A DNA stretch of 64,000 nucleotides from Octopus bimaculoides. Lineage: Eukaryota. Both the position numbers and the translations under genes were made by a program. Shown piece after piece: positions 327-27,935 of the stretch (positions are counted from its first letter, which is position 1; the number at the start of each line of letters is the position of its first letter). The notes below the pieces were generated by a model that was not told the origin of the DNA, made no database searches, and saw only the letters and a program-made list of their open reading frames with translations. The DNA lies in contig NC_068984.1 of assembly GCF_001194135.2 (NCBI RefSeq), forward strand, positions 147,566,840-147,630,839, read 5' to 3'.

Positions 327-897
327 ATGTTTTGTTGTGCTGGTTGTAGGAAATCTAAATCAAAGAAGATTTTGCAAGTAACACCAGACAGCAAGAACTG
401 TGAAAATCCAATTTTCAAGTCAGGAAACGGAGTTGAGCCACCGATTGTTGAGAAAGTAGAACTTGACCTTCAGACAAAACCAGCCAGCGTAGAAACAACA
501 ACAGCAACAACAGACATCAAAAAAGAGACTGCAGCTGATCCAGTTGCATCTTCTAAAGAAAATACTTTTACCTCCGAAGCAAAGACGAAAGAATTTAAAA
601 AGGACATTGTTAAAAAGCCCAGCAGTGAGCAACCAGTTTCCTCTCTACCGTTTGCGAGTGAACTTATTAAAGCATCACAAAAAAGAGAAAAACGTGTTGC
701 CAGTGAGCTATCGAAAGCTCTTACCATTGCTGCAGAAGAAAGAGCTCGACTCAATTCTGGCGAAATGTCAGCTGAGCAAATGATAAAATCAATTGAGCGT
801 CTTGAGACAGCGGTGGTGAGCCTGGAACGGGTATCCACACGGCTTGAGAATATTGCCAACACTTCCGGAAAGTTAGTTAATACAGGCAACTCTGAAG
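327..897 (+). CDS. CAP1: CAP first coding exon 1a: long N-terminal extension followed by the RLE coiled-coil motif
   Basis: ATG at 327 follows an in-frame TGA at 300-302, with no AG in between. The C-terminal part MSAEQMIKSIERLETAVVSLERVSTRLENIA matches the CAP/Srv2 N-terminal RLE repeats. It ends at the donor GAAG|GTAAGA after 571 nt (phase 1), which fits exon 27832. Confidence 0.9.
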
Positions 898-2159
898 GTA
901 AGAAATTAAATTTTTCTTTTTACCCCCCTCCCCATCTACTTTCTTTATTATTAGGAAAAGACCAAGTGCTTCCAGTTGGCCTTAAAGAACTTTTCACACC
1001 TGTTGATTGCTTCATAGCTTCACAGCATGAAGTAGATGCAATATATCGCAGTTAAGATTCACTGAAGTTCTGACATCTCTTTCTAACAACTCGGTAAACT
1101 TCAGGATTACAGAAATAAGTTTTTGGTCCAAATATTCAACAGAACACCTGCAAGACATAAAAACTTGTAGATTTATGCCTTATCAGTTCAGCTATTTCAC
1201 TTCTATATTTGGTTGCACATCAACTTCTAGCAGGGCCTATGCCGTGGTTTCAACACGTTAGGCCAGCCCTGCAGTATGTGCCTCTTTTTCTCCTGGCCCT
1301 ACAATATGCACCCCTTCCCTTCTTAGCACTTCACTATGCAACCCCTTCTCATCCATACAATGTACACCCTCTTCCCTCAACCCTACCGTGTACTCCCTCT
1401 TCTCCCTGACCCATAGTGTGTACCCGTCTCTAATTTTTTCCTACAACTTCCCCCAACCATTACCCTCTATTATGCCAACTGGAAAGGGCACCTGGAAATT
1501 CTGATTAACTTGGAAACATGAGATCTATAGTTTTATGCTCATTTTGTGTATCACCAAGTAAGTTTCTGGCATAATTTGAAATGTTTCATGCCGTGACTGG
1601 ACACAACCTCATAAAAGCCTATTGTCTACTACAATCCACTAACCCAGTCGTGTGTCCTCTTGGGTTTCATGCTTTTAGTTAAATTAAGAAATTTTATGTT
1701 GGGTTGTTCAGAATTTGTATTCTTCCCCACCACCATTGCTGCATACTCTATTCAGGATTAAAAGTATCTAAACTATTAATCTGTCGCACTAGTGGAATTG
1801 CCTTACCATTTTCTAAGTAGTGCAATCCTGCTGTAAAACATCCAGTGTAGCTTCTTACTGATCAGGGGCAAATCAGATCTAAAATGGCTATATAGTGCTA
1901 GATAATTGATCTCCAGTTCTAATCCATTGTTGGCACTGTAATAATGTCTGGACACTTAGTTTTGGTCATTTCAGCTAAGTGATTGTTATCACTCAGTAGA
2001 AGTTATTTTTTTTCATATTACCAGGGATGGTCTGACATCCCTTTTCCAAAAGAGATATTTTCTTCTCATTTTTGCTCAATGCCCTGATATTGTAGCTGTC
2101 CCTTACGTTATTACATTTAACTACTCAGAAGTTTCCGTAGATGTGGTTGACAGCTTCTT

Positions 2160-2510
2160 TTAGCAAGGTGACCTAATTAGCTGCGGAGAAGAGGGTTTCA
2201 AAGTGTAGTAGCCGGAACAGGAATCACAGGGTGGAGTTTAGAAAGCTCTTGTCTCTATTAGCAACAAAAAAGAAACTCTGTCTCCAATTGAAGTTTGATA
2301 CTGCATGGAATCAAAAGATTAGTATTGAATGCAAAGGATTTACAAAAATTGGAAATAAATGAGGCACGCATGTTTTGCTAGACATGTAATTTGTGTGTGT
2401 TTGCATGATTGACGGATGACAAATAAATCAAGAGGAAAAACAAGGTGTGAGAGGAAAGTTCTTAGATGGATGTCAAGTGTTTGAAAGGTGACAGACGTGT
2501 AAAGAAGTGC
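2160..2510 (+). mobile_element. Old RTE LINE 3' fragment
   Basis: Degenerate EFRKLLSLLATK...FDTA motif paralleling the 32.3-kb copy. Confidence 0.45.
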
Positions 2511-5500
2511 CAACCAATTCCAAGGCAAAGACCAAAAAGTATGTTGTTGTAAGTCAATGGTACACCATTACACATCTTCACCACAATCTTTCTCTTCCAA
2601 GTGGGGGTAACCATGCATCATACCCATTCCTTTCATCTGGCATAAAAACCACCTCCCTCAATACTGCTCTCCTGCCTCTTGTTGACTTCACTAGTGCCAG
2701 TGCCAGATAAAAAGGACCCAGTACACTCTGTAAAGTGGTTGGTGTTAGGAAAGGAACGCAGCCATTGAAAACCTGCTAAGGCAGACATTGGAAATTGATG
2801 TGGTTCTCTGGTTTGCCAACTCCTGTCAAACTGTCCAACCCATGCCAGCATGGAGAATGGATTCTACATGATGATGAGGTAATAAAGGGTGATATCAAGA
2901 AACATTCTGGCTGGATTCCCAAAATATCACTGACTCAGACTATGGATATTATCCAAGTAACTTATTCCACCCTTAGATCTCCTGCCAGTTGGCTTGTCTT
3001 GAATCTGTTTTCTGATTCTTTCTTCTGACAGTCTAACCACATGGCCATAACTGTGATCTCTTATGTAATTCAATATTTCCAAAGAAGTTCACTAAAAACT
3101 AAGATTTTCTATACATCTTTGAATATTTTTTTATCCACTTCCAATCATTATAGCAACTATGAAAAAGAAATTGCATGGTTGTGTTAACGATGGACATATT
3201 ACATTTCATTCCTTATGCAACTGTTTCTGTTTGTTTATTTTCATTATAAATGTGGCTTTTCCAATGTATTGAATAGAAATGAATTATAGACTTAATATCC
3301 AAATTATTTATTTAAAAAAGCAAAATTTCAAAAGACTATCTTTCTTTTTTTCATAAACATACTGATTAAAAATAAATTGCACGATCATCAACTCATGTGA
3401 GTGTGGAGAATGGATATGATGAAGTGGTCATCATCATTGTTTTAATGTCCTTTGCATGGTTGAGATGGAGTTTATTGAGGCAGATTTTCTACTGCTGGAT
3501 GCTCTTCCTGTCATCAACCTGTGCCTGTTTCCAAGTAAGGTAATATTTCCCCGTGGCCAAACATATTTTCACAGGATATTGGAAATGAATGACACTGCTT
3601 GTATAACAAGGATAATCATTTACAACTTTCACACTATGCCAAGTCAAGGACACACACACATATTTAGCTTCCATCAACGAAATCCATTCTGAAGGCCTTA
3701 GTTGGCATGGGACTACTGTAGACACATGTCCTAAGTGCCAAGCAGTGGGACTGAACTTGGAATCATGTTGTTGGGAACCACACACCTGTGCCTGCCACTA
3801 TCTGAGTGGTAAAAAAACTGCCTCAAAAAATAAACAGATAAAAAAAACATGCAACCCATACCAGCATGGAAAAGCAAACTGAAAATGATGATGATGATGA
3901 TCTCCAGTTCCAGTAGTTTCTATGCTATCAGAGAGCAGACATTCAAGTAATCAGTGAAGTAAGCAAACATGATAAAAACAGTGGTTTCTAGTTTCTGTTT
4001 TGATTGTTGAATGTGTTGAGTTGGTGGGGGNNNNNNNNNNNNNNNNNNNNNNNNNNNAATAATGATTGGAACGGTGGGGTATAAAAATGGTCTGTGTCAT
4101 CACAGAAACCCTTCTGACATTTGTTGTTTACTATCTTCCATCACCTACAAATATAGACACTTCAGTAATATTGCAAAGGAATATTACTCCTTGGTTCTAG
4201 AGAATTCCATCCTTTCAAAAAAAAATAAATAAATAAAGCATAGAAAAAATATAAAACCTCACACACCTACCAAAACCACTGCTATGTTGACAACTTTGCT
4301 TGATTCAAATTCTCTGTTGAGTTGCCAATCAATTGCAGTTAATTGAAGAATTGACATTGGTACAAGCTAGTCCTGTCCATTATGTCTGTCTGTTGTCCGG
4401 CCATCATTACACAAATTATATGGGTATGAAATAGTTCCTGTGCTGAAGACGACAAACACACTGGTTGGTGCAGGACTGCTCTGTGCTGCTTCTTTGTAAA
4501 AGTGTTAATGTCTCTCTTAATTTCCCACGAGCTTCAAAAGTCAGTTCTTACCTGTGCATTTGTGCAGCCAGGTAGATAAACCTTGCTCACTCTCTACCAC
4601 TATCCCCACTTCTCTCCCTCACACATTATCACCACCAGCTTCTTTCTTTTCCAACTGGGTTAACTATGTGTCTCCCTGACGGCAAGACACCTGTTCTTGT
4701 CTCTCTATTGCACTTTGACCTCTCATCACCTGGCAAAAACTCTCCCACCTTCTTCTATGCTAATTGGTTTTGTCTTGTTAGTTACTTAGTGACTGTACTT
4801 GTGCCAGTGCTCTGTAAAAAAGTACACTCTGTGAAGTGGTTAGTATTAAAAAGGGCATCCAGCCATAAAAACCATGTCAAAGCACACTGGAACATGGTGC
4901 AGTCCTCTGGCTTTCCAGCTCTTGTCAGATTGTCCATTCCACATCAACATGGAAAGCAAATGTTAAAAATGAGGATTAAGATTGCTTACCTGTTTGCTAA
5001 ATGGATTGAGACAGTGTAGAATTAAGTATACTTGCCAACGATGCCTGCAGGGAGTTTGAACTTTGAGCAGTTTGGTCAGTGCCATATCTTAGATTATTTT
5101 GTTTTATTTATGTCAACAACACCGCCATACCATTCAACAATATCCTCTCTTTATTTGCCATCAACTCCAATGCACAGAGGAAATTGGCTGCACATAGAAT
5201 GTGTAGTCTTAATCTTTAACACCATGCAGAAGGAGCATGGAGTCTTAGTTCTTCACTGATATTGGTTAGAGAAAAGGGAACATGGTAAGAAACAGAAAAC
5301 ATGGTCCATTTACTACTGCAATGGAACTTGGAGTTTCTGGTAAATTTGTAAAGATTTTATACTTGTATAGTTTGAAGAACAAAAGTAATGATTTCAGACT
5401 CTCCAACTGGAGGCTATCAAAGATATGGCTACAGTACTAAAGGTAGTAAAAAAAGGTTGGTATGAGGAAAATTTGGCTATTGTTGAATAATAAATTGTTG

Positions 5501-5924: not shown

Positions 5925-7079
5925 TGAAATTATTCGAGTGAGTTCGTTGCCAGTGCCCCTGAACTGGCTCTTGTGTGGGACCGTCGTAGGATTTTCGAGC
6001 GAGATCGTTGCCAGTGCCCCTGGACTGGCTCTTGTGTGGGCGACACATGAAATCTTTCGAGCGGGATCGTTGCCAGTGCACCTGAACTGGCTCATGTGCG
6101 GGCGACACATGAAATATTTGGAGCAAGATCATTGCCAGTGTCACCCGCACAAGAGCCAGCCCAGGGGCACCGGCAATGATCTCGCTCGAAAGATATCATG
6201 TGTCGCCCGCACATGAGCCAGTCCAGGGGCACTGGCAACGATCNNNNNNNNNNNNNNNNNNNNNNNNNNNNNNNNNNNNNNNNNNNNNNNNNNNNNNNNN
6301 NNNNNNNNNNNNNNNNNNNNNNNNNNNNNNNNNNNNNNNNNNNNNNNNNNNNNNNNNNNNNNNNNNNNNNNNNNNNNNNNNNNNNNNNNNNNNNNNNNNN
6401 NNNNNNNNNNNNNNNNNNNNNNNNNNNNNNNNNNNNNNNNNNNNNNNNNNNNNNNNNNNNNNNNNNNNNNNNNNNNNNNNNNNNNNNNNNNNNNNNNNNN
6501 NNNNNNNNNNNNNNNNNNNNNNNNNNNNNNNNNNNNNNNNNNNNNNNNNNNNNNNNNNNNNNNNNNNNNNNNNNNNNNNNNNNNNNNNNNNNNNNNNNNN
6601 NNNNNNNNNNNNNNNNNNNNNNNNNNNNNNNNNNNNNNNNNNNNNNNNNNNNNNNNNNNNNNNNNNNNNNNNNNNNNNNNNNNNNNNNNNNNNNNNNNNN
6701 NNNNNNNNNNNNNNNNNNNNNNNNNNNNNNNNNNNNNNNNNNNNNNNNNNNNNNNNNNNNNNNNNNNNNNNNNNNNNNNNNNNNNNNNNNNNNNNNNNNN
6801 NNNNNNNNNNNNCCGCTCGAAAGATTTCATGTGTCGCCCGCACATGAGCCAGTCCAGGTGCACTGGCAACGATCCCGCTCGAAAGATTTCATGTGTCGCC
6901 CGCACATGAGCCAGTCCAGGGGCACCGGCAACGGTCTCGCTCGAAACATTTCATGTGTCGCCCGCACATGAGCCAGTCCAGGGGCACTGGCAACGATCCC
7001 GCTCAAAACATTTCATGTGTCACCCACACAAGAGCTAGTCCAGGGGCACTGGCAACGATCTCGCTCGAAATATATCATG
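5925..7079. repeat. About 62-bp minisatellite array that inverts orientation near 6140 (foldback-like)
   Basis: The unit CGTTGCCAGTGCCCCTGGACTGGCTCTTGTGTGGGCGACACATGAAATCTTTCGAGCGGGAT starts at about 5945, 6006, 6068 and 6130. Reverse-complement units occupy 6141-6243 and 6813-7079; 6244-6812 is a gap. Confidence 0.9.
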
Positions 7080-7323
7080 TGAATCTGATTAATGTCTAGC
7101 TTTGACTTATGTTGTCTCTTTAGCTCAAAGTAAATTCTTTTATGACTTGACTTTATTTAGCTTTTACTCTAAGGATAAATAATACATGCAAAATAGGATA
7201 GTTTGTGAGTATAATGACATATACAAATGGAAGTATTAAATTGTGTTATAATTACAAGAACTTGTAACTGTTGGCATAATTAATAATGTCTGTGTAATAC
7301 CTTATATGGTATTTGTGTGTTCA

Positions 7324-7383
<60 letters not shown>

Positions 7384-9379
7384 TTTATACAGACAGTCAT
7401 TGTCATTTTCCATCCTGTTTTTTTTTCCATGCTAGCATAAATACACGCACCAATCAACAATACATGTTACATACATCACAAACACATATTCCTACAATCT
7501 TGTTTTGTTTCTTTTTTAAACAAAACAATGGGAAAATACTCTCTCTACAGATGAACTTTGACTCCCCCTCCCTCTCTCCCTCCCTCCCCCCTTCTCTCCT
7601 TAATATTCCAATGGTAGAAATGAAAGTATGTTTCTGTTTTCAATCCTATCCTATAGGTTCTAATTACTGTTAAATGAAAACACGGGTTTGTCCCATCTTG
7701 ATAGAATTTTGAGTCATATTGGTACACTTAATCCAGAGACTCAACTTCAGTAACACCTGAGTGCTAATGTAAACAAAAGTTCTATATATGAATATATCAT
7801 CATCATCATCATTTCAATGTCTGCTTTTTTCATGCAGGCATGGATTAGATGGTTCAACTGGAACCTGCAAGCCAGAGTTCTGCATGAAGCTCCATAGTCA
7901 GCTTTAGCATGCTTTCTGCAACTGGGTGACCTTCCTGAATGCTTTTTAAAAGGCTTTAGCTCTAGTGAAGTCAAGTCTGGTGAGTGGAGGGAATGGTATT
8001 GAGGGAAGAGGCTTTATAGCAGGTAATGGGAGTTGTATAGAAACAAGTGGATTTCTGTGGAGGAGGTACATGGTTACCGCAGTTGGAAAAGAAAGAGGAG
8101 GGTGTTGAAGATGCGTTAAGGCATACCCTCAAGTTAGAGCAAGATCTATTTTCCTGTAAAACAATGTCAACCTCATAAGGATGATTTCAAGTCACAACAC
8201 TAAGAGTTGACAAATAACAAAGCATTTTATCAAATTCTACCAATCATCATCATCATTGAATGTCCGTTCCATGTTGGCATAGGTTGGACAGTTTGATCAG
8301 GGCTGACAAGCTGGAAGGCTACACCAGACTCCAGTCTGATTTGGCATGGTTTTCTACAGCTGGATGCCCTTTCTAACATCAACCACTTCAGGAGTGTAAT
8401 GGGTGCTTTAACATGCCACCAGCATGGGTGCCATTTGCGTGACGCCAGTATCTGTCACGACTGCGATTTTGCTTGGCTTGATGGGTCTTCTTCTCAAGCA
8501 TGACATAATGCCAAATGGTCTCAGTCATTGTCTCCGTGCGGCCCAACACTCGAAAGGAACTCAGCCACTTTGCCTCCATGAGGCCCAACACTTGAAAGGT
8601 GCTCTTTACATGCTCATCATTGTTTAACGTCTTCTTTCCATGCTGGCATGGGTTGGATGGTTTGACAGGAGTTGGCCAGGCAGAAGCCTGCGCCATACTT
8701 CTGTGTTTGTTTTGGCATGGTTTTTCACAGCTAGATGCCCTTCCTAACACCAACCACTCAATAGAGTGCCACTGCCTCAAAATATATTTAATCATGACAG
8801 TCTCAATTATATTTTGTAGTTGTTGAATGAAAGCATACTTAATGCATGGAGTAGTTGAACATTGAAGTGAAATATATAATGTGTCGAGGAAAAAGTCTTA
8901 GACCAGGACATCTATTTTCCAGTATTTATGGGTGACAACTTCAGACATGTTTCTGGATGTTTGAAACTTCTTAGCAAAAGTATGACCTTACTGCATCTTG
9001 ATAAACTGGTAGCAAACAAACTAATAAGTAAATGGACAGAAGTATAGTTTGAAGGTATTAAAAATAAATTTGTTTAGAAATTACATAATTTTGAGATGTC
9101 ATCTATTTGATGAACAATAAGGTAAGTGGGTTAATGGGGCATTAAAATGCTGAAGTAAACTAAAATAATGTAGTGAGAAAAATGGTGAAGAAGTTTGCTT
9201 CCCAAATACTTGGTTTTAAGTTCAGTCCCACTGTGTGGCACTTTGGGCAAGTATCTTCTACTTTTTGCCCTAGATTGCTCAAAGTTGTGTGAGTGGACTT
9301 GGTTGGTGGAAACAGTAAGAAGCTCACCACACACACACGCACACGCACACGCACACACACACACNNNNNNNNNNCACGC

Positions 9380-9429
<50 letters not shown>

Positions 9430-10249
9430 GTATGTGTATGAGTGTATCTCTTGATATCATAGTTGTAAATGAGTATTGCTGCTTTACAAGCAATGTTATT
9501 TGTTTCTGATATTCTACTGCACATGTCTGGCCATGGGGAAATATTACTTTACTTGGAAATAAGGTGAGGGTGGGTGACAGGAAGTGCATCCAACCATAGA
9601 AAATCTGCTTTGATAAATTGTGCCTAATCCATGCAAGCATGTAAAAGTAGACATTAAAACAAGAATAATGATGATGATGATGATGCTGATTTCTGAAATT
9701 ATTTTAAACTCATATTTTACAAAGGAAATTTTAAGTCAAGTTTCATCTACAAAATTCAGATTTTAACTTGAATGTGTGCATGTGTGTACTCATATATTTT
9801 ACCAACCCGATAACTTTGCATTTTGGTTGGAATAAGTAATCAATACTCCATAATTAATGTTGTTGTTGTTGTCATAGGCACAAACATGGCTGCAGTAAAA
9901 TCCAAACTCACTCTAAGGAAAATGCTGACAAGTCTACATTGGTATAAGAACAGTTTTCTTTTCTAACAACTGTTAATGCATCGAGCAGCTGTGAGATTTT
10001 ATAGATCCTTTCATATTTTATCAATTATATGTAATAGTAGCATACTTTTATGGGAGTTTCCAACCATCTGTGGCTTAGAGATTATTTACTCATTCACTAA
10101 GCAAAGAGTTTACAGGCAAAAGAGGCCACCGACCACTCAGACTTTTTTCTCTGAGCTCATTTTTGTGCAAATTGTACAAATTACGAATTACCTGGGGCAT
10201 AAATGTGTCTATTCCTTTTTTTTTTCTTTTTTTTTTTTTTGCATAAGTC

Positions 10250-13005: not shown

Positions 13006-14438
13006 NNNNNNNNNNNNNNNNNNNNNNNNNNNNNNNNNNNNNNNNNNNNNNNNNNNNNNNNNNNNNNNNNNNNNNNNNNNNNNNNNNNNNNNNNNNNNNN
13101 NNNNNNNNNNNNNNNNNNNNNNNNNNNNNNNNNNNNNNNNNNNNNNNNNNNNNNNNNNNNNNNNNNNNNNNNNNNNNNNNNNNNNNNNNNNNNNNNNNNN
13201 NNNNNNNNNNNNNNNNNNNNNNNNNNNNNNNNNNNNNNNNNNNNNNNNNNNNNNNNNNNNNNNNNNNNNNNNNNNNNNNNNNNNNNNNNNNNNNNNNNNN
13301 NNNNNNNNNNNNNNNNNNNNNNNNNNNNNNNNNNNNNNNNNNNNNNNNNNNNNNNNNNNNNNNNNNNNNNNNNNNNNNNNNNNNNNNNNNNNNNNNNNNN
13401 NNNNNNNNNNNNNNNNNNNNNNNNNNNNNNNNNNNNNNNNNNNNNNNNNNNNNNNNNNNNNNNNNNNNNNNNNNNNNNNNNNNNNNNNNNNNNNNNNNNN
13501 NNNNNNNNNNNNNNNNNNNNNNNNNNNNNNNNNNNNNNNNNNNNNNNNNNNNNNNNNNNNNNNNNNNNNNNNNNNNNNNNNNNNNNNNNNNNNNNNNNNN
13601 NNNNNNNNNNNNNNNNNNNNNNNNNNNNNNNNNNNNNNNNNNNNNNNNNNNNNNNNNNNNNNNNNNNNNNNNNNNNNNNNNNNNNNNNNNNNNNNNNNNN
13701 NNNNNNNNNNNNNNNNNNNNNNNNNNNNNNNNNNNNNNNNNNNNNNNNNNNNNNACCATTTCGAGCGTGGCCGTTTTCGTGCGGGTGACACGTAAAAGCA
13801 CCCACTACACTCTCTGAGTGGTTGGTGTTAGGAAGGGCATCCAGCTGTAGAAACTCTGCCAAATCAGACTGGAGCCTGGTGTTGCCATCCGGTTTCACCA
13901 GTCCTCAGTCAAATCGTCCAACCCATGCTAGCATGGAAAGCGGACGTTAAACGATGATGATGATGATGATGATGATATATATATATATCATCATCATCAT
14001 CCATTGTCCATGCTGGCATGGGTTGGATGGTTTGAACAGAAGTGGCAAGCTGGGGAGCTGCACCAGACTCTAGTCTGTTGTGGCATGGTTTCTACAGCTG
14101 GATGCCCTTACTAACATGCCAACCACTTCACAATATGTGCTTTTATGTGGCACAAGTGCTTTTGGGGAACCACACAGGCACGTTTGCATGGCACCACCAT
14201 GAATACTTTACACAACCAAAGGGACTGATGTTAATGCTTCAGCATCCTGAGTTCAGCATCCTGAGTTCATCCTTCAGTACTTCATGCCATCTCTTCTCGG
14301 GTCTTCCACTTTCATGTGTTCCATCTACTTTGACAAATTGGCACTTCTTTATGGCGCTGTCAACATCCATCCACATCACATGACCAAACCAGTGCAGTCT
14401 TCTCTCTTGCACACAAGTAATTCCTCTTATTGCCTAAC

Positions 14439-16959: not shown

Positions 16960-17006
<47 letters not shown>

Positions 17007-17044: not shown

Positions 17045-17147
17045 ATGTATGTAAACAATCCTAACAGCATGAATTGTTACTATCCCCCGCCATACAATTA
17101 TTCCTATCAGTATTACCAATCGCCAGTATATTATCAACCTGTCACAG
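17045..17147 (+). CDS. CAP1: Candidate alternative first coding exon 1c of CAP: MYVNNPNSMNCYYPPPYNYSYQYYQSPVYYQPVT
   Basis: ATG has A at -3. 34 open codons plus 1 nt end at a consensus donor CAG|GTGAGT in phase 1, the same phase as exon 1a. The composition (10 Tyr) is non-random. Confidence 0.65.
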
Positions 17148-17497: not shown

Positions 17498-17547
<50 letters not shown>

Positions 17548-19406
17548 TGCGTGCGTGTGTGTGTGTTGCTCAGCAGTTTTTAGCATACAATCAAAGAAGA
17601 AAATGATTTGCTTGACGCAACACAAAGGTTCTGATTTATGATAGGGTCCAAGTTCAAATCCAGCTGAACATTTTCAATATTGAATGCAATCACGACTCTT
17701 CCCAAACGTATGGTTTCAGGTTCAGTCTCACTGTGTGNNNNNNNNNNNNNNNNNNNNNNNNNNNNNNNNNNNNNNNNNNNNNNNNNNNNNNNNNNNNNNN
17801 NNNNNNNNNNNNNNNNNNNNNNNNNNNNNNNNNNNNNNNNNNNNNNNNNNNNNNNNNNNNNNNNNNNNNNNNNNNNNNNNNNNNNNNNNNNNNNNNNNNN
17901 NNNNNNNNNNNNNNNNNNNNNNNNNNNNNNNNNNNNNNNNNNNNNNNNNNNNNNNNNNNNNNNNNNNNNNNNNNNNNNNNNNNNNNNNNNNNNNNNNNNN
18001 NNAACACAGAAATGGAATAATTCAGGTGTGAAAGGTGATTTATGATTGTCAAGTGAAAAAAATGGCATCTTCACAAATAAATACATTCATTGCTTATATG
18101 GTGATGGTGATGGTAAGTGGTGGTGATGGTGAGGGTAAGTGGTGGTGGTGTAGTAGAAGCAATAATAGCAGCACTAGTGTAGTTAGTGGTGACTTGTAAC
18201 TTGTGCACTTTCTCTGCCTGTCATAGGAATGAATGTACAAGCTTGGCTGGGTGGTTAAGAAGTTTGCTTGCCAACCACATGGTTTCGAGTTCAATTTCAC
18301 TGCATCACATATAGCTTCTAGTGAAGTCTCGGATTAACCACTGTGGTTTTACCTGAGAAATTTGCTACACAGAAACTGTACTGAAACCTGTGTGTGTATC
18401 TTCACATTGACCCTGCTTGGGCAGCAGTGATGGGCTTATGACCCCACCACCACCGCCACCATCACCACACACTTAAATAAACAATAGGTTTGCTAATTTG
18501 ATGGTTCACTGGCGAGAAGACATGGAATAAAGTACCTTGGCCCCATCCACCTCTAGCTATTCCATTATACTTCCACCCCTAGCTATGCCCTAAACAAGGG
18601 GAGGGGACATGTTCATTCACACATCTCTAGACACACTTTGTTTCCACCAACTTCTGCTTTTCCTAGTATTTAGTACCTTTTTTGGGCAACTTTTTGTAGT
18701 TGTCACTTTTGGCTGGTGTTCTTGGGTGACAAGAACAGAATGACAGGTTGTGTGGTGACAGGGTGGGGAAGGTTGAGAAAAGGAATTATGTTGTGGTGGT
18801 CGTGGTGGGATTTTTGTAGTGTGAACTTATGTGATGATGGTGATAGTAATGGTGGTAATAAGTAATAATGGTGTTGAGGATAATGATGGTAGGTGGTTGC
18901 TGTCTGCTGTTGTTGGGGAATGGTGAGTGATCTGTTGATGATTGAATGGAGATGGGAACAGCGGTGAGAAAAGTTTGTTTTCTTTCTTTCTTTCTTTTTA
19001 GTAATCTACCCCTCTTCTGGGTGTCCCGTTGTTAGTGTTGGTGTTGAGGGGTCATAGCAATTCAAATAATGCTTGTTGGAGTAATGGAAGAGGTTGATTT
19101 AAGGTGCAGTTGCCCTAAAGGTAATGATTATGTTAGAGAGAAGGAGGGAGAGAAAAAGCAATTAAGTAACCTTCCTCATTTACTACATGAGTGGGGGACT
19201 GGAGTGGGGCTGGCCTAGAAAAGAAAGTAGGATTATCAGCCTGTAGCTGCAACAACACTAGTGTGTGTGTGTGTGTGTGTGTGTTGCTTGAGTACCACAC
19301 AAACCAACTAATCAGGAGCTTAGTGTCCTGGACTTGGTGTAAGGGGTCAGAGAAGTTTTGTGATAGTTTTGGTAGAGTTTTGAGTTTGTTTTCATGTCAC
19401 ATATAC

Positions 19407-19800
19407 ATGGGTACTTGTGTTAGTCACAGTCACAAAAAGCCATTGGTGGCTGTTGTGACACAGGACAGCAGTTGTACTGTAGGTGGTGGTGGTGGTGGTG
19501 GTGGTGGTGATGATGACAGTAGAGTTATTACAGGTAAAAGTGCTGTTTGTGTATCAGATTGCAATGAGGGCACTGAGACTACTTACTACGAGACTATCAA
19601 CAACTACCAGGAAAGCCACCACTACGTAAACAATTACCCCAACTACGATACTATCAAGGACCACTACTATGACAATAGCAAGAGCAGGACTTCTATCAGT
19701 GACGACGAGTATGACCTCTCCATTGATAAAATCTCACAACAAAAAGTGGGAATAGAAAAAGAGGAGGAGGAAGAGGAGGACAGCGATTATGCAGAAGTAG
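19407..19800 (+). CDS. CAP1: Candidate alternative first coding exon 1b of CAP: MGTCVSHSHKK... plus a Tyr-rich acidic tract ending DSDYAEV
   Basis: 131 codons plus 1 nt end at AG|GTAGGT (phase 1). The 3' part is rich in C-ending codons (TAC, AAC, GAC, CAC), unlike the surrounding intron. A phase-1 internal acceptor lies at 19557/19558. The 3' part is better supported than the ATG. Confidence 0.7.
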
Positions 19801-19932
19801 GTAGGTGTTAACACACTCTCTCTCCCATTGACCAACTTAACATCCGTAGCCCTCATCCTCTCTGCTCCAGAGATTCTGCTTACATGTAAATGTTGACTTC
19901 TTTGCAAGATTCACAATTTATAGTATTATCCA

Positions 19933-19965
<33 letters not shown>

Positions 19966-20460: not shown

Positions 20461-20502
<42 letters not shown>

Positions 20503-22239
20503 CATATGCATGTGTATGTATATGCATATGTGTATGTATATATATGTTCAATATGTTCAAGGTGATGCTCCAGCATGGCTGTAGTATAATGCATGAAACA
20601 AGTAAAAGATCAAATGTCTGTGTGTGTGTATGTATATACACAGGCATATATCTACTAGTCGTATGCGTGTGTGTGTGTGTGCATCTCTTCGTTTCTTAGC
20701 TCAAACCTTTCTCCTGACATCACCTGTTGTCTTTCAACAACCTGTACCTGTCTGAATCGTTGTTCTCTACACATTCCTGGAATACTAATCATGTGTTGTG
20801 CGTGACTCACACCAACTAAACTAGCTTAGTCTCTACTGTTGGAGCTATTTGGCTCTTCTGAAAACCGGAGGTAATTTAGTCATGATGCAGTCGCAACAGT
20901 ATTTAGCAAAATAACTTCTGCTTTTATACTTTCCAACCTATACTCAGTTGCCTTTCTCTCTCTCATGCCAGTATACTTCTTTCCTCCCAGTACTCTCTCT
21001 TCTCTCTCTCTCTCTCTCTCTCTCCTTGTCAAAGACACAATGTAATATGTACATTCTACCACAAACAGTGATACAAGGGATGTATTATATAATCAGTTAC
21101 TTTGCTCAGCAGCCTGAATTTCCTAAAACAAATGACCATTTTCTTTAAGAGGCCACTAGTTTTCCAACCCTTAATTGTAACATAGCTTGTCCCATAAATA
21201 AAATGGAGGCAAAAAAAAAAAAACACAGAAATCTGTTAAACTTTCCACCCAAAGAAAATTATGACAAAGCATCATGTATTGTAGCACCACATGAAACTGA
21301 ATGAAAGACTCTGCCTCTCCCTCACCCAATCTCCTATTCTCTCTTTTTTGACATTTCTGATTATTAGTACAATTGTCGTCAAAGTCCCTTAGAAACCCAT
21401 TGCTATTTTTAAATTAGTGATATTGTTTTAAATGCCTAAATAATTACAGTATGCTCCACCATAAAGTCAAAATAATGATGATGATGATCATCATCATCAT
21501 CTTAATGCCCATTTTTCCATACTTGCACAAGTCAGAGTTTAATGAGGAAAGTTCTCTATGGCTGGATGCCCTTCTTGTTGCCAACCTTCACCCGTTACCA
21601 AACAAGGTAATATTTCCCCATGGCCAGTTGTGTGTGTGACTGATTTGTCTTAGCATCACAAGATTGTTGTAAATGAATGCCATTCATTTCCAATATTCTG
21701 TGAAAGAGATTATTCTCCAGTTCTGCTGTCGGTTACACTGTATAACAAATTGACCATATTATCACAACCTTTGGACTGTCAAAAGCTGTTTATGTATTAT
21801 TTCTGCATCATCTTTTTCACTGCACGGTGTCTTGGACAAGTGTCTTCTGCTTTAGCCCCAAGCGAATCAAATCTGTGTGAGTGGATTTGATAGATTGAAG
21901 CTAAAAGAACCCAGTCTTGTGTGTGTTACTACCTCCTTGCCTTCACTTCACATGATAGCTGTAAATGAGTGTCACCATCATACAAGCTGTTCATTTCCAA
22001 TCTTCCATGAATACCTGTCTGATCATGGGGAAATGCTACCTGATTTGGAAACTGATGAGATTTAAAATGCAGGGCAACTGGCCATAGACAATCTTTCTCA
22101 ATAAATTCTGTCTGACCCATGCAAACATGGAAAATTGGGCAATATAAAGATGATGATGATGATTGCAATGATGGACTTTAATCAATGGGTATGACTCCAG
22201 CTGGTTCTGCCACATATCGTAGTTTCAATTCTTTGGAAT

Positions 22240-22340
22240 CTGATAATCTGATAATCTGATAATCAATAACCTATTGCTGAGCAAATATTGATATTGCTGA
22301 GCAAATATTGATATTGCTGAGCAAATATTGATATTGCTGC
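22240..22340. repeat. Adjacent short tandem repeats: about 3x TGATAATC, then about 3.5x of the 20-bp unit ATATTGCTGAGCAAATATTG
   Basis: Directly visible perfect tandem copies. Confidence 0.95.
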
Positions 22341-23062
22341 TATTTTGTTGTTTTGTGTTTGTTTTAGATAAAAAGGGAATAAATTTGCGCTTGTTAAAAG
22401 ATGTCTTAAATGCTGCAATTTTAATTGCTTTACTTTTTGCCAAATGCCCCAACATAGTTTTGGATCTTATCCAACATTTTCTATTTGTATTACTACATTT
22501 ATTAGGTTATAAGTTCCCAAACGCTCAAGAGTACATGCGCACACACACACACACACACACACTATATTTATATCTACATCTTTTAATCTTCAATCATCAT
22601 AATAGTAAGATTAGAAGAAAATTGTTCACTAATTGGTGAATGGCATTTTGAAATTACAATTGTTCTTACTGGGTCTTAAATTGAATGAATGAAGCTCCCT
22701 TTTTTTTATTTGGTTATGAAAGTCAACTGATAGCACCTTGGGCAAGTATCTTCTGTAGTCTTGGGCTGACCAATACCTGTAAGTGAATTTGGTAGATGGA
22801 AACTGTGTGGAAGCCTATCATGCACACACACACACACAAGTATGTGTGTGTTTGACCCTCACCCACCACTGTTTGACAACCGTTGTTGGTTTGTTTACAT
22901 TCTCGTAACTTAGTGGTTGAGCAATAGAAATTGATAGCATAAATACTGCCCTTTAAAAATAAATTACTGTTCGTGATTTGTCTGATTAAAACCTTCAAGG
23001 CAGTGCCCCAGCATGGCTGCAATCTAATGACTGAAACAAGTAAAAGAAAAGATAAACAAAAT

Positions 23063-23118
<56 letters not shown>

Positions 23119-24104
23119 TTAAATTTAAATGTTTTATAAGTTTGTATTCCTTGGTGGGGATGGGGCCAGTCTTCTTTCGAGAAGCAAGAAAAGTTTTACT
23201 TCATACTTAGTCGAAGGGAACAAGAAAANNNNNNNNNNNNNNNNNNNNNNNNNNNNNNNNNNNNNNNNNNNNNNNNNNNNNNNNNNNNNNNNNNNNNNNN
23301 NNNNNNNNNNNNNNNNNNNNNNNNNNNNNNNNNNNNNNNNNNNNNNNNNNNNNNNNNNNNNNNNNNNNNNNNNNNNNNNNNNNNNNNNNNNNNNNNNNNN
23401 NNNNNNNNNNNNNNNNNNNNNNNNNNNNNNNNNNNNNNNNNNNNNNNNNNNNNNNNNNNNNNNNNNNNNNNNNNNNNNNNNNNNNNNNNNNNNNNNNNNN
23501 NNNNNNNNNNNNNNNNNNNNNNNNNNNNNNNNNNNNNNNNNNNNNNNNNNNNNNNNNNNNNNNNNNNNNNNNNNNNNNNNNNNNNNNNNNNNNNNNNNNN
23601 NNNNNNNNNNNNNNNNNNNNNNNNNNNNNNNNNNNNNNNNNNNNNNNNNNNNNNNNNNNNNNNNNNNNNNNNNNNNNNNNNNNNNNNNNNNNNNNNNNNN
23701 NNNNNNNNNNNNNNNNNNNNNNNNNNNNNNNNNNNNNNNNNNNNNNNNNNNNNNNNNNNNNNNNNNNNNNNNNNNNNNNNNNNNNNNNNNNNNNNNNNNN
23801 NNNNNNNNNNNNNNNNNNNNNNNNNNNNNNNNNNNNNNNNNNNNNNNNNNNNNNNNNNNNNNNNNNNNNNNNNNNNNNNNNNNNNNNNNNNNNNNNNNNN
23901 NNNNNNNNNNNNNNNNNNNNNNNNNNNNNNNNNNNNNNNNNNNNNNNNNNNNNNNNNNNNNNNNNTTTTTTTTTCACCTTTACACCTCTCCTCCCTTATT
24001 TTACTTGTCAAAACTAAGATTAGAAACTTGCTGAAAATTTGGACTGGTGAATCTTCTCAAATAACTCCCTCCATGTTATTTTTTTAATTTTGTGTGCATA
24101 TATA

Positions 24105-24138
<34 letters not shown>

Positions 24139-27100
24139 ATGGTGTATTAAATGTGTTCCACAAGGCAGCAGTTAAATACTAGAAAACCTGACATACTTAT
24201 GGGACATGCGAAATTGAAATATAAACATATACATGCTCTTTCTCTCTCTCTCTCACCCCCACCCCTTCTCTCTCCAATTTTGTGTTGGTTTTCTGCACCA
24301 ATCACAGGTATTGCTGTGAAAAAATAGGGGTTTGTAGATGTAATGGCATGCGTCATTGAAACTGAATTAACAGAAGACTCTTGAAGGTGGAGCAATCTCG
24401 GTTGTTGTTGGGGAGGAGCATCTTAACTGAGGAGTTAGAGAAGATAATGGTAAAAAGATTATTCTGTGTAGCAGCTGCAGAGGTGGTGGTGGTGGTGCAG
24501 TGTTGCTATGTTTGCTATCTGTTCCCCTATCATCCCTTTATTTTCCCAACTCCAGATGCAAAACTGCTTCACAAGGTGGTGCTGCTGCTGCTGCTATAAC
24601 CTGAGGTGATAAGTTTAGTTATAGGGTCCCAAGTTTGCATTGATTTGGCAGAGTTGTTTCTGGTCAAAGGCTGAAACACTTTTGCTGATCGTTCAATATA
24701 TTGATAGGCCCAGGCATGGCTATTGTAGTTTAGAAGCTCACTTTGCAACCATCTGGTTTTCGGGCCAGTCCCACTGGGCAAATGTCTTCTATAGATACCT
24801 CAGGCCAACTTTTGAGTGAATTTGCTTAGACAGAAACTGAAAGAAGTCCACTGTGTGTGTGTGTGTGTGTGTGTGTGTTCTCACCCACTCTCACTGCTTC
24901 ACAACCAGTTTTTGTTTGTTTACATTCCTGTAACTTAGCAATTTGGAAAAAAGAGACCAATAGAATAAGTACCAGGCTTTAGAAGTACAAAGGTTAATTT
25001 GTTTGACTAAAAACCAGTGAATGTTGTGCCCACAGTCCAGTGACTGAAATAAATAAAAGAAACAGACAATATTCTCTTAATTTGTAGTAGTGTATGTTTT
25101 AAGTCACTGCAAAGTGGATCCCTTGTTGAGGCTCCCTTCTTGATTAATTCTAATTTTGACATAAGACCAACAATTTTTAGGGGTTTCAGTTAGTTGATTT
25201 CTTTGGCTCCATTACTTCACTGGTCCTTTGTTTTATCTGATCAACCCCAGTACTTGATTGCTATGATATTTTATTGACTCCAAAAGAATGTAAGGCAAAG
25301 TTGGCCTCCATGGGACTTAAACTCAGTGTATAATCTTTGGTAGCAGGCACCAAGGCCACTCACTGTTCCATTATAAGGACACTCTATAAAGACTTAGAAG
25401 ATAAATCTGAAGACACAGGAATCAGAAGCACTAAAGCCATCTCTGACTTTGAGGCAGCCAAGATGTACACCCTAAAAAAAGAAAAGGACCCACCACAGAG
25501 CCAAGCCCAGATGACAGAGATGACTATTGCAATGTCAGCCACTGAATTTGCAAATCCTGGATAAGTTTGAACTCCCACATGAGAGACAACATGATCAAAC
25601 AGTGAACTAAGGACACTATTCACATGTGTCTTGTTGTTGAACCCTCATTCATTGCATGTGACAAGAGAATCCAATATAATGGGTGACCTTATCAGCAATT
25701 TCTTTACAATATTTCATACATTTAAAATCGATCAGCCTGTTGTCTAGAATATTTTACAATGTAGATCAGGTCAGGTATTTGGAATGCACTGTTGCTGCAT
25801 CCATCATTTGTCAGCAATTCCTGGTGGATGATGTGTCTGCACCACTCAGGTAACAACCCTCTGACCCATGAATCTGTCTGGGGTAGTTGGTGATTTGTTT
25901 TACCATGTCACAGTACAAGTCCTATCCCAATCTCTTTTAATCACCTTTTGACATTCAGAGGAAATGTCAAATCTATTGTTTGGCATGCCATTCAGTACAT
26001 TACATTCAGGATATGACATGCCATTCAGTACATTACAAAATGTAGTTTTGGATAGAATGTGATCCTCAACTTTCCAACCTTAAATAAATCATTAATATAC
26101 GTAGCTCTTTGTTGTTCCCCTCATTTTCACCTTTTGATGGTTTCTACTAAACTTCTCACATTCACACAAGTAGGAATGGTATTGTTTATCCAAACTTAGA
26201 TTTCCTCATCAGTAATTATTCTGTGAAGCTGTGAAGACGACAAAGATGTCAAAAGTCTGTATGATGTCATCAGCCTTACTTAATGGAAGATGATGAAAAA
26301 ATTTTAATCATTGTTTAATATTATATTTTTCTAGTTTACATCATTAATTCTTTATACATTAATCACCACACCCTTATTATCTAGGTGTGTAGTTAAGAAC
26401 CTTGCTTCCCAGCCATGCGGTCTCCAGTTCAGTCCTACTGTTAGGCACCTTGGGCAAGCATCTTCTACAACTCTGGGCTAATCAATACCTCTGTGAGTAG
26501 ATTTGGGAGATAAAAACTGAAAGTCTATTGCGTGTGTGTATACCCTTTTCTTGTGATGAGTGTTCATTGTTTTTTTTTTTCCATCTTCCCTGAAAACCAT
26601 GTCTGGTTATGAGAAAATATCCCCTTGCTTGAAAATAGTTATGGTTTGGTGACAGGAAGGGCATCCAGCTGTAGGAAATCTGTCATAACAAATTCCATCA
26701 GAGCCATGCAAACATTGAAAAGTAGATGTTAATGCAATGATGATAGTGGTGATATTTATAGTTTAAACTTTTAAGACTCTTATAAACTGATGATGTTAAT
26801 TCCTGCTTAATTGTGATAGTTTGTAGTTGGGTTTTCTTTCTTTTTTTTCTTTTTTTTTTGCCTTCAGGGAAGAACTTGAAAGAACAAACTTCTCACTTTG
26901 CTCTGTCACAACTTAAAACGCCTTGTGTATTTGTGTGTGTATTGAAAGGATTATGGAAGTAGTGAGATTAGCATGGAATTAATACAGTGTGCAAGTGTAT
27001 GTGTAAGACTTACACCAAGCTGGACCACTGCTGGCTAGATTATATATTACATTTGTTTATCTAATCTTACTTCACCGATACTACTAACAAGAATTTGTTA

Positions 27101-27156
27101 ATTACTGCTTGACTAATGATTCTAGCTAGTATTTAATCATCCTTCTGACACAACAA

Positions 27157-27480
27157 TTATTGTTATTATTGTTGTTGTTTTACTTCTCAGAGCATTTGGT
27201 CTCGTTTGCTCTGGCTGATTTTGTGAGAGCAGACAGCAGCCTGCTGTCAGAGATCTCCCACGGTCTCTTTCTGCACATTATAAGCTTTGATAATTAGTTG
27301 TTAATTAATGTGGAAGATATTCAACACCCAAGTACCAATCTCAAAATCCTAGCTGTCCCCAGCAGAGCAGTTTTTTAGGCTTGTGCTGCTCTCATGTCAA
27401 TTGCGATTTCTCTGATATATTTCTTGAACTTGGTTGTTAGTGCTTTTCTCTGACATATTTCTCAAATTTGGTTGTCAGTG
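27157..27480 (-). mobile_element. Short 3' fragment of a third R4/Dong-like LINE
   Basis: Minus-strand TTKFKKYIREIAIDMRAAQA*KTALLGTARILRLVLGC*; TTA/TTG microsatellite on both sides. Confidence 0.75.
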
Positions 27481-27831
27481 CTATTATTGTTATTGTTATT
27501 ATTATTAGTTTTTCGTCATCTTTCAGTTTTGTTTCCATTTCTGGCCGTATCTTCCCCAACACTTAGGGCAATAAAGCTCATTGTATACATTGATTGGCCA
27601 TTTAAAGGCAAGTACCCCCTCCCTCATCGCCCTCTTTCGATCTATAGGCACATACTCAGAGCAGGCCCATTTGTCTGGACCATTCTTGCCACTCTCACCC
27701 ATCTCTCAACAAGTTTGTTAGAAGGCACTATTTTCCTCTCCATCTTCCCTTTCCACTTCAAGTTGAAGCTGTCTGTCTTCAACCGTTTCTTTATTAATAA
27801 TAATCTTTTTTTTTTCTTCTTTTCATTGCAG

Positions 27832-27935
27832 AAGTACTTTCACCGTTTGTAGTGGCTTACGATGACATTATCAAGGGACCCGTGGCAACATTTATTGCCC
27901 TCTCTTCCAAGATTAATGGCAATGTGAAGATCCAG
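27832..27935 (+). CDS. CAP1: CAP common exon 2 (start of HFD): (E)VLSPFVVAYDDIIKGPVATFIALSSKINGNVKIQ
   Basis: Long polypyrimidine tract and TTGCAG acceptor; CAG|GTAAG donor; phase 1 to 0. Aligns by eye with the CAP1 segment [32 protein letters not shown]. Confidence 0.95.

What the first reader, a model, noticed from the sequence alone, without database searches (positions are those of the whole stretch)
327..27935. Three phase-matched alternative N-termini feeding one CAP core: a candidate modular targeting system
Seen in sequence: three ATG-led open exons (327-897, 17045-17147, 19407-19800) each end in a strong donor in phase 1, exactly the phase the acceptor at 27832 needs. Established: canonical CAP/Srv2 begins with a short RLE coiled-coil needed for oligomerization and, in yeast, cyclase binding. 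Inference: alternative promoters swap the CAP N-terminus among a Cys-cluster form with RLE, a myristoyl/Tyr-rich form without RLE and a PPxY form without RLE. This would redirect the same actin-recycling core to different membranes and partners. The supplied ORF track does not show exon 1c at all.
Basis: partly seen in the sequence, partly recalled or inferred. Interest (0 to 1): 0.88.

Follow-up and report, generated by a model that had tools for sequence, protein, structure and literature searches.

The report
Alternative first exons of CAP gene
An invertebrate gene for the actin-recycling protein CAP has, inside its first intron, a second start exon that a related species keeps as coding sequence; it would give a lipid-anchored CAP without its usual oligomerising tip, whereas the third proposed start exon remains unproven.

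Summary
The gene is a genuine CAP/Srv2 homologue (Pfam CAP_N E=3.9e-64, complete) and runs off the window's 3' end.

- **Exon 1a (327-897):** the canonical RLE coiled-coil exon, preceded by an open 146-codon extension that starts MFCCAGCRKSKSKK.
- **Exon 1c (19407-19800):** a real, conserved coding exon. Three Logan contigs from a related species align across it. All 7 indels inside the ORF are multiples of 3, against 1 of 16 in the flanks. dN/dS is 0.43. The ATG, the MGTCVS acylation motif, the tyrosine motifs and the donor are conserved, and frame conservation stops 9 nt into the intron.
- **Exon 1b (17045-17147):** it has the best donor-like site on the window's + strand and the correct phase, but it is only 34 codons long and no orthologous sequence could be found. 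It stays a candidate.

No transcript data were reachable, so splicing of 1b or 1c to exon 2 is inferred only. Each of the four exons lies on a different contig of the scaffold.

Verdict: partly supported. This is a two-form (possibly three-form) alternative N-terminus gene, a new variant of a known kind.

The parts
327..897 (+). Exon 1a, the canonical first coding exon. Codons 1-146 are an N-terminal extension starting MFCCAGCRKSKSKK (Cys3/4/7 plus a basic run). From the in-frame ATG at 765 (M147) it encodes the RLE heptad coiled coil (MIKSIERLETAVVSLERVSTRLE). Donor AAG|GTAAGA, phase 1.
   Evidence: The frame has 0 stops, against 7 and 20 in the other frames. The RLE stretch aligns to human CAP1 residues 8-22 (weak on its own).
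17045..17147 (+). Candidate exon 1b, 34 codons: MYVNNPNSMNCYYPPPYNYSYQYYQSPVYYQPVT (10 Tyr, one PPPY). Donor CAG|GTGAGT, phase 1. Unproven.
   Evidence: Best donor-like site on the + strand of the window. Arises in 6-25 of 1000 simulations. A second frame is also open here. No orthologue found.
19295..19344 (+). 50-nt block upstream of 1c, 92% identical in the related species. Possibly core promoter or 5'UTR (inference).
19394..19423 (+). Out-of-frame upstream ATG with a 9-codon uORF (MSHIHGYLC*) that overlaps the 1c start codon. Conserved in the relative.
19407..19800 (+). Exon 1c, a conserved alternative first coding exon of 131 codons. It encodes MGTCVS (N-myristoylation consensus plus Cys4), an acidic Tyr-motif-rich low-complexity region (YYETINNYQES, HYVN, YDTI, EYDLS, DYAEV) and a Glu run. 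Donor TAG|GTAGGT, phase 1.
19801..19809 (+). Conserved donor GTAGGTGTT. The first frame-breaking indel between the two species follows directly after it. The window's in-frame stop (19809-19811) is not conserved.
27832..27935 (+). Exon 2, the common exon and start of the helical folded domain (EVLSPFVVAYDDIIKGPVATF...). The acceptor requires phase 1.
30431..30508 (+). Exon 3 (CAP_N).
31576..31629 (+). Exon 4 (CAP_N; EQMNHLLNPTSSKLQAIQ).
36838..36927 (+). Exon 5 (CAP_N).
39262..39344 (+). Exon 6 (CAP_N).
40256..40361 (+). Exon 7 (end of CAP_N).
61804..61982 (+). Exon with the WH2 motif (LKKVSDDQKTHKNP), P2-like linker and start of the CARP domain.
62715..62838 (+). CARP-domain exon (CAP_C profile 15-58 of 157). 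The rest of the gene lies beyond the window.

Best explanation
The window holds the 5' three-quarters of a CAP/Srv2 gene with at least two alternative first coding exons.

Exon 1a gives the canonical form. It has an RLE coiled-coil oligomerisation tip, here preceded by a 146-residue disordered extension whose first residues (MFCCAGCRKSKSKK) look like a palmitoylation/polybasic membrane anchor.

Exon 1c lies about 19 kb downstream in the scaffolded first intron. It is an independently conserved, ATG-initiated coding exon. It starts with an SH4-like myristoylation/palmitoylation motif and continues as an acidic region with conserved tyrosine motifs. It ends at a conserved phase-1 donor that fits the phase-1 acceptor of exon 2.

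The most likely mechanism is a second promoter or first exon that produces a CAP with the complete helical folded domain, WH2 and CARP domain but no oligomerisation tip. This form would be tethered to membranes by acylation and possibly dock SH2 proteins once phosphorylated.

Shown: the gene's identity, the exon anatomy, coding constraint on 1c, and conservation of its ATG, motifs and donor.

Inferred: splicing of 1c to exon 2, a separate promoter, acylation, phosphotyrosine docking and altered oligomerisation.

Exon 1b is a statistically unusual but unverified third candidate (my estimate is about 0.4 that it is real).
For: **Gene identity**
- CAP_N E=3.9e-64 covering profile 1-159/159; CAP_C E=7e-13.
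- Human CAP1 structures match at E=1e-42 (N half) and 7e-19 (WH2 plus CARP start).

**Boundary**
- Exon 2 aligns from human residue ~40, and CAP_N starts 9 residues into exon 2. Exon-1 swaps therefore leave the folded domain intact.

**Exon 1c is coding**
- An exhaustive HMMER search found one relative, P0001 (E=4e-39, 75% identity over residues 1-131). It is carried by three Logan contigs from runs SRR11869391/84/85.
- The DNA alignment runs through both flanks.
- Indels inside the ORF are 3, 3, 12, 3, 9, 3 and 3 nt. Flank indels are 1, 14, 3, 1, 2, 2, 11, 1 and 10, 1, 5, 2, 13, 1, 20, 2 nt. By my arithmetic a Fisher test gives p about 3e-5.
- dN/dS is 0.43 with dS 0.33.
- The other two frames carry 10 and 26 stops.
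- A candidate of this kind arises in 5 of 1000 simulations.

**Exon 1c ends at the donor**
- The 25 nt around the donor are identical between the species. A 1-nt indel follows 9 nt into the intron, and the downstream stop is not conserved.

**Exon 1c is a first exon**
- The sequence upstream of the ATG has 1-, 2- and 11-nt indels.

**Motifs**
- MGTCVS, all Tyr motifs and the Glu run are invariant in 4 sequences.

**Exon 1a extension**
- It is open for 146 codons while the other frames have 3 and 14 stops over the same span.

**Precedent**
- Toxoplasma makes a palmitoylated, membrane-bound long CAP and a cytosolic short CAP (PMC6785269).
Against: - No transcript evidence of any kind. The protein collections held no CAP protein from this species or its relative, whether spliced or genomic. 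The junction 19800>27832 is therefore unobserved.
- Phase compatibility alone has a 1-in-3 prior.
- 1c sits on a 2.1-kb contig bounded by gaps. Two further gaps lie before exon 2, so its placement and orientation inside the CAP intron depend on scaffolding, and unseen exons could lie in the gaps.
- The three Logan contigs carry 1c contiguous with its flanks. If those runs are RNA, that would point to an unspliced transcript.
- The 1c start has T at -3 and an overlapping conserved uORF.
- Nucleotide identity of the exon (84.6%) is only slightly above the flanks (75-82%).
- Only one related species was available.
Confidence: 0.6

Rival explanations
1. Exon 1c is the first exon of a different gene. 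That gene is either nested in the CAP intron, with partner exons in the unread or unrecognised sequence between 19.8 and 27.8 kb, or it is misplaced there by scaffolding. It never joins CAP exon 2.
For: Every link between 1c and CAP exons crosses assembly gaps. The 1c peptide has no similarity to any CAP or Pfam family. Phase match has a 1-in-3 chance.
Against: 1c has the same strand and the correct phase. No other convincing ORF or exon lies in the readable 19.8-27.8 kb. Most gaps are flanked by microsatellites, as expected for local assembly breaks rather than misjoins. A same-strand nested gene would need its own terminal exon and poly(A) site inside the CAP intron.
Confidence: 0.22
2. Exon 1c is a stand-alone, unspliced small ORF of 134 aa in the window and 153 aa in the relative. 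It encodes an acylated Tyr-rich microprotein and lies in the CAP intron.
For: In both species the ORF reads on past the donor to a stop. Three independent Logan contigs hold the ORF contiguous with its flanks, while no other part of the locus from that species is in the collection. That would fit transcript-derived contigs.
Against: The tail after ...DYAEVGRC is not conserved: a stop in the window, 19 unrelated residues in the relative. The frame breaks 9 nt after the GT, whereas the donor consensus is perfectly conserved. The nature of the Logan runs (DNA or RNA) is unknown.
Confidence: 0.1
3. The full three-way system as proposed by the first reader. 1a, 1b and 1c are all used from separate promoters, all splice to exon 2, and each redirects the CAP core to a different place.
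For: All three are ATG-led, open and in phase 1. The 1b donor is the top-scoring site on the strand. A 1b-like candidate arises in only 0.6-2.5% of simulations. 1b has A at -3 of its ATG.
Against: 1b is 34 codons long. A second frame is open over the same stretch. The surrounding 17.0-17.5 kb is TA-rich and gives Tyr-rich ORFs on the other strand too. Real-sequence controls yield similar-length candidates in 2 of 5 strand-phase combinations. There are no comparative data and no transcript data. The simulation thresholds were set post hoc.
Confidence: 0.25
4. Both 1b and 1c are chance ORFs in a long intron.
For: Long low-complexity ORFs of 130-170 aa occur elsewhere in the window.
Against: For 1c: seven of seven frame-preserving indels, dN/dS 0.43, conserved ATG and donor, and a uniquely open frame. 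The joint simulation probability is about 1e-4.
Confidence: 0.02

Closest known systems
Canonical CAP/Srv2 (human CAP1/CAP2, yeast Srv2, Drosophila Capulet)
   Same: The same domain order: N-terminal heptad (RLE) oligomerisation tip, helical folded domain, WH2, CARP (domain scheme from review PMC7543520).
   Different: Exon 1a adds about 146 residues with a Cys-cluster start in front of the tip. Exon 1c would replace the tip altogether. The review does not mention splice variants (0 occurrences of 'splice'). It states that CAP1 has no known membrane anchor.
Toxoplasma gondii longCAP / shortCAP (PMC6785269)
   Same: One CAP gene gives a membrane-bound form with N-terminal palmitoyl-cysteines and a cytosolic form. 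Localisation depends on those cysteines.
   Different: Toxoplasma uses two start codons in one exon and has a CARP-only CAP. Here the proposal is alternative first exons on a full-length CAP, with myristoyl-Gly plus Cys (1c) or a Cys cluster (1a). An in-frame ATG at 765 in 1a could also give a Toxoplasma-like short form (untested).
SH4 dual-acylation motif of Src-family kinases (Lck, Fyn) and acylated adaptor proteins
   Same: Met-Gly-x-x-x-Ser with a nearby Cys and downstream Lys, followed by a disordered region. This fits PROSITE N-myristoylation pattern G-{EDRKHPFYW}-x(2)-[STAGCN]-{P} (established knowledge, read directly).
   Different: No sequence homology. Acylation is untested. The attached module is CAP, not a kinase.
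GAP-43 / neuromodulin N-terminus (MLCCMRRTKQ)
   Same: Exon 1a starts Met-x-Cys-Cys followed by basic residues and a long K/E/T/A/P-rich disordered stretch. This is resemblance by eye, from my own knowledge.
   Different: No detectable homology and nothing was tested. This is a lead only.
CAP paralogue pairs (vertebrate CAP1/CAP2, C. elegans CAS-1/CAS-2)
   Same: CAP function is diversified within one organism.
   Different: Those arise by gene duplication with full-length proteins. Here diversification would come from N-terminal exon choice within one gene.

Membership tests
CAP/Srv2 family | Helical folded domain (Pfam CAP_N, PF21938) | tested here: met
   E=3.9e-64, one stretch, profile 1-159/159. 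Human CAP1 residues 40-208 match at E=1e-42.
CAP/Srv2 family | N-terminal heptad/RLE oligomerisation region of about 40 residues | tested here: met
   Exon 1a reads IERLETAVVSLERVSTRLE directly. The alignment to human residues 8-22 is 67% identical but not significant alone. It is absent from 1b and 1c.
CAP/Srv2 family | WH2 motif between proline-rich stretches | tested here: met
   LKKVSDDQKTHKNP aligns to human 271-284. The P1 proline exon was not located.
CAP/Srv2 family | C-terminal CARP beta-helix domain (Pfam CAP_C) with dimerisation strand | tested here: inconclusive
   Only profile positions 15-58 of 157 lie in the window (E=7e-13). The rest is beyond base 64000.
Gene with alternative coding first exons | Each first exon has its own ATG, an open frame and a donor in the phase of the common acceptor | tested here: met
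Gene with alternative coding first exons | Alternative exon under coding constraint in related species | tested here: met
   Met for 1c: 7 of 7 indels are multiples of 3, dN/dS is 0.43, and the ATG and donor are conserved. For 1b no orthologous sequence could be obtained, so that exon is untested.
Gene with alternative coding first exons | Observed splice junctions to the common exon, and separate transcription start sites | not testable with these tools
   No RNA data. No spliced product is in the collections.
N-myristoylated / dual-acylated (SH4-type) proteins | Gly2, permissive residue 3, small or Ser/Thr residue 6, nearby Cys | tested here: met
   MGTCVS is invariant in the window and three relative sequences. 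This matches the pattern only.
N-myristoylated / dual-acylated (SH4-type) proteins | Actual lipid attachment and membrane localisation | not testable with these tools
   Needs metabolic labelling or mutant localisation.
WW-ligand (PPxY) proteins | Functional PPxY motif in an expressed protein | tested here: inconclusive
   PPPY is present in 1b, but expression of 1b is unproven.

The most novel reading that the evidence does not exclude
A metazoan CAP gene uses alternative first exons to swap its oligomerisation tip for a dual-acylated, tyrosine-motif scaffold (1c), and perhaps for a PPxY/Tyr-rich head (1b). Even its canonical form carries a palmitoylation-type anchor. Actin-monomer recycling and cofilin-assisted depolymerisation would then be tethered directly to membranes and wired to tyrosine-kinase signalling. 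No such mode of CAP regulation turned up in my literature searches for any animal.
Probability: 0.3. Interest if true: 0.65.

Novelty: new variant of a known kind. Interest (0 to 1): 0.5.

Why it matters
CAP is a core, universally conserved actin-turnover factor. How it reaches membranes is an acknowledged open point: the 2020 review notes that CAP1 lacks any membrane anchor.

A conserved exon that would give CAP a myristoyl/palmitoyl anchor while deleting the oligomerisation tip offers a natural separation-of-function variant. It has the helical folded domain, WH2 and CARP, but not the tip that drives hexamer formation and boosts cofilin-mediated disassembly. It would also parallel the palmitoylated long CAP of Toxoplasma, which would suggest that membrane-tethered CAP forms arose more than once.

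If the junction is not used, 1c is still a conserved, unannotated acylated Tyr-rich small protein or exon worth naming.

Tried and rejected
1. **Protein search with 1a + exon 2.** No hit. The collection lacks CAP proteins from this lineage, so annotated isoforms could not be consulted.
2. **Search with 1c + exon 2 + the 1b read-through ORF.** Only the genomic 1c ORF of the relative was found. There was no spliced product and no 1b orthologue.
3. **Concatenated ORFs flanking 1b, plus exon-2 and exon-3 read-through ORFs.** This was meant to fish a contig of the relative that covers 1b. Nothing was found.
4. **Exact look-ups of the window's own 1c and 1a ORFs.** Neither is on record.
5. **Two metagenome scans for 1c relatives.** Nothing was found.
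6. **Idea that 1b and 1c are paralogous (YVNNPN versus YVNNYPN).** Rejected. 1800 of 2000 composition-preserving shuffles score as well.
7. **1b as an internal cassette exon via the AG at 17042-43.** Rejected by reading the sequence. The frame hits TAA and the exit phase would be 0.
8. **1c extending upstream as coding, since its frame is open from 19191.** Rejected. Frame-breaking indels of 1, 2 and 11 nt lie upstream of the ATG.
9. **1b or 1c as part of a repeat or transposon.** Rejected. Both are unique in the window, although two SINE-like families fill the introns.
10. **Tyr-richness of 1b as evidence of coding.** Weakened. The neighbouring minus strand gives a similar Tyr-rich ORF.
11. 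**Pfam on the 1b and 1c peptides.** Nothing significant.
12. **Rfam and tRNA scans of the window.** Nothing.
13. **Literature searches.** These covered alternative first exons, N-terminal extensions, myristoylation, capulet and cephalopod CAP. Only the Toxoplasma precedent and a general review were relevant. The SRR run numbers were not found in any paper.
14. **My human CAP1 probe for tblastn.** Its results were used only as a guide and were re-tested against Pfam and PDB.
Full report
**Observation.**
- 1a (327-897, 571 nt), 1b (17045-17147, 103 nt) and 1c (19407-19800, 394 nt) each begin with ATG, are open, are followed by GT and end in phase 1.
- Exon 2 (27832-27935) follows TTTTCATTGCAG and needs phase 1.
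- Joined to exons 2-7, each of the three reads through without a stop.

**Assembly gaps.** None of the gaps cuts an exon, so being in frame across a gap does not arise. However, every pair of these exons is separated by at least one gap: four between 1a and 1b, one between 1b and 1c, and two between 1c and exon 2. The last pair includes 23229-23965, which is not in the program's list. Each exon therefore sits on its own contig, and the order, orientation and intron lengths rest on scaffolding. Most gaps are bordered by (CA)n, (TA)n or (CT)n runs. That is the usual cause of local breaks in short-read assemblies and mildly favours local continuity.

**What the gene is.**
- The seven N-terminal exons (1a; 27832-27935; 30431-30508; 31576-31629; 36838-36927; 39262-39344; 40256-40361) have canonical YAG acceptors and GTAAG/GTCAG donors.
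- They match Pfam CAP_N over its whole length (E=3.9e-64, profile 1-159/159) and human CAP1 residues 40-208 (E=1e-42).
- Two further exons (61804-61982 and 62715-62838) carry the WH2 motif LKKVSDDQKTHKNP and the start of the CARP domain (human residues 271-372, E=7e-19; CAP_C E=7e-13).
- The proline-rich middle exons were not located, and the last ~100 residues lie beyond the window.
- Exon 2 starts at the first helix of the folded domain, and CAP_N begins 9 residues into it. Exchanging exon 1 therefore changes only what precedes the folded domain. In canonical CAP that is the ~40-residue heptad oligomerisation region (review PMC7543520).

**Exon 1a.** It contains the RLE heptads (IERLETAVVSLERVSTRLE). 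They sit 146 codons downstream of the first ATG. The frame is open throughout, while the other two frames have 3 and 14 stops over the same 438 nt. By my arithmetic the chance of that is about 1e-4, so the extension is probably translated. It begins MFCCAGCRKSKSKK, a cysteine cluster followed by basic residues. An in-frame ATG at 765 sits where canonical CAPs start.

**Exon 1c.**
- *The relative.* An exhaustive HMMER search of 1.84 billion representatives with the 131-residue peptide gave one true hit, P0001 (153 aa, 75% identical over residues 1-131, E=4e-39). It and two near-identical cluster members come from three Logan assemblies (SRR11869391, SRR11869384, SRR11869385), on contigs of 1.1-1.4 kb that I fetched. 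These contigs align to window ~18.7-20.07 kb across the ORF and both flanks. They are therefore the orthologous locus of a related species (dS 0.33).
- *Frame conservation.* Inside the ORF the seven indels are 3, 3, 12, 3, 9, 3 and 3 nt. In the flanks they are 1, 14, 3, 1, 2, 2, 11, 1 upstream and 10, 1, 5, 2, 13, 1, 20, 2 downstream. By my calculation a Fisher test gives p of about 3e-5.
- *Selection.* dN/dS is 0.43 over 125 codons.
- *Conserved elements.* The ATG, MGTCVS, the blocks YYETINNYQES, HYVN, NYD-I, HYY, EYDLS and DYAEV, and the Glu run are invariant.
- *Exon end.* The 25 nt spanning the donor are identical. The first frame-breaking indel lies 9 nt into the intron, and the in-frame stop that follows in the window is absent in the relative.
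- *Exon start.* Frame-breaking indels also lie just upstream of the ATG. Coding constraint therefore starts at the ATG and ends at the donor, which is the signature of a first coding exon.
- *Chance and repeats.* The 1c frame has no stop, while the other frames have 10 and 26. The exon is not part of any repeat. A candidate this long with such a donor arose in 5 of 1000 simulated introns.
- *Weak points.* The start context is poor (T at -3), and a conserved 9-codon uORF overlaps it.

**Exon 1b.**
- *For.* Its donor CAG|GTGAGT scores 9.0, the highest on the + strand of the whole 64 kb; the only other site at or above 8 is the real exon-2 donor. An ATG-led ORF of at least 103 nt in phase 1 on such a donor arose in 6 of 1000 simulations, or 25 of 1000 with donor >=8. 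It has A at -3.
- *Against.* It has only 34 codons. A second frame is open over the same stretch. The local sequence is TA-rich and gives a Tyr-rich ORF on the opposite strand as well. Real-sequence controls gave similar-length candidates in 2 of 5 strand-phase combinations, though with weaker donors. Its apparent YVNN similarity to 1c is composition only.
- *Missing data.* No orthologous DNA could be obtained.
- I put its chance of being a real exon near 0.4.

**What could not be tested.** No transcript or annotated protein from this lineage is in the reachable collections, and two metagenome scans found nothing. The junctions 19800>27832 and 17147>27832, the promoters and the lipid modifications are therefore all inferences. 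The odd fact that only the 1c locus of the relative is in the collection leaves open that those runs are RNA. In that case an unspliced 1c transcript would have to be considered.

**Mechanism proposed.**
- Shown: exon anatomy and conservation.
- Inferred: a second start exon gives a CAP that keeps the helical folded domain, WH2 and CARP domain but lacks the oligomerisation tip.
- Gly2 fits the N-myristoylation pattern, and Cys4 with Lys10/11 fits SH4-type dual acylation.
- The conserved YxN, YxxI and YxxV motifs in an acidic disordered stretch resemble SH2-docking sites.
- The 1a form keeps the tip but may be palmitoylated at Cys3/4/7.
- Both forms would thus be membrane-directed, one oligomeric and one not.

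**Comparison and novelty.** The nearest described case is Toxoplasma. There one CAP gene gives a palmitoylated apical long form and a cytosolic short form through alternative start codons (PMC6785269). My literature searches found no report of alternative first exons or acylated N-termini for an animal CAP, and the review notes that CAP1's membrane association is unexplained. Automated genome annotations, which I could not consult, may already list such isoforms. I class this as a new variant of a known kind.

**Verdict.**
- Confidence that 1c is a conserved coding exon ending at a splice donor is about 0.9.
- Confidence that 1c feeds CAP exon 2 is about 0.6.
- Confidence that all three exons work as proposed is about 0.25.
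- Interest is 0.5.

Noticed in passing
window 47046-47057: The sequence AGATCGGAAGAG (Illumina adapter core) sits directly against the 10-N gap 47058-47067. It is probably adapter contamination built into the assembly.
   Followed up: no
window 23229-23965: A 737-N gap lies inside the finding's range, between 1c and exon 2. It is missing from the gap list supplied with the finding.
   Followed up: yes
window 2683-2881, 4790-4982, 8243-8768, 13778-14153, 30055-30313, 33096-33286, 35029-35361, 46803-47011, 47365-47581, 53479-53605: A dispersed SINE-like repeat family (about 130-310 bp, 70-87% identity, both orientations) fills the CAP introns. A second family lies at 3416-3656, 9424-9684, 21475-21627, 28688-28934, 37514-37692 and 40767-40966. 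Neither family touches the exons.
   Followed up: partly
window 5925-7081: A tandem array with a period of about 62 bp (84-92% identity between copies) straddles the 569-N gap 6244-6812. It gives rise to several long spurious ORFs.
   Followed up: no
window 55574-56254 (-) and 57264-58421 (-): Retroelement remnants: a weak reverse-transcriptase match (RVT_1, E=8e-4, below cut-off) and a PHD-finger-like ORF (E=2e-4). They are interrupted by gap 57277-58059 and lie in a late CAP intron.
   Followed up: partly
window 19394-19423; L001-L003: An out-of-frame upstream ATG opens a 9-codon uORF (MSHIHGYLC*) that overlaps the 1c start codon. It is conserved in the related species and could control translation.
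   Followed up: partly
window 19295-19344: A 50-nt non-coding block upstream of 1c is 92% identical to the relative, which is better conserved than most of the exon. It is a candidate promoter or 5'UTR element.
   Followed up: no
window 765-767 within exon 1a: An in-frame ATG (M147) sits 5 codons before the RLE heptads, where canonical CAPs start. A possible acceptor (ccattgctgcag|A) lies at 735/736. A short cytosolic form by alternative initiation or an upstream non-coding exon is conceivable.
   Followed up: no
L001-L003 (Logan SRR11869391, SRR11869384, SRR11869385): Only the 1c locus of the related species is present in the protein collection. Exon 1a, exons 2 and 3, and the surroundings of 1b from that species are all absent. 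All three contigs end at the same base downstream. The type of these runs (DNA, RNA or enrichment) is unknown.
   Followed up: partly
window 40362-61803: The proline-rich (P1) middle exons of CAP were not found in this 21-kb stretch. It contains two gaps and many repeats, and poly-Pro ORF pieces at 42211 and 43215 are unconvincing.
   Followed up: partly
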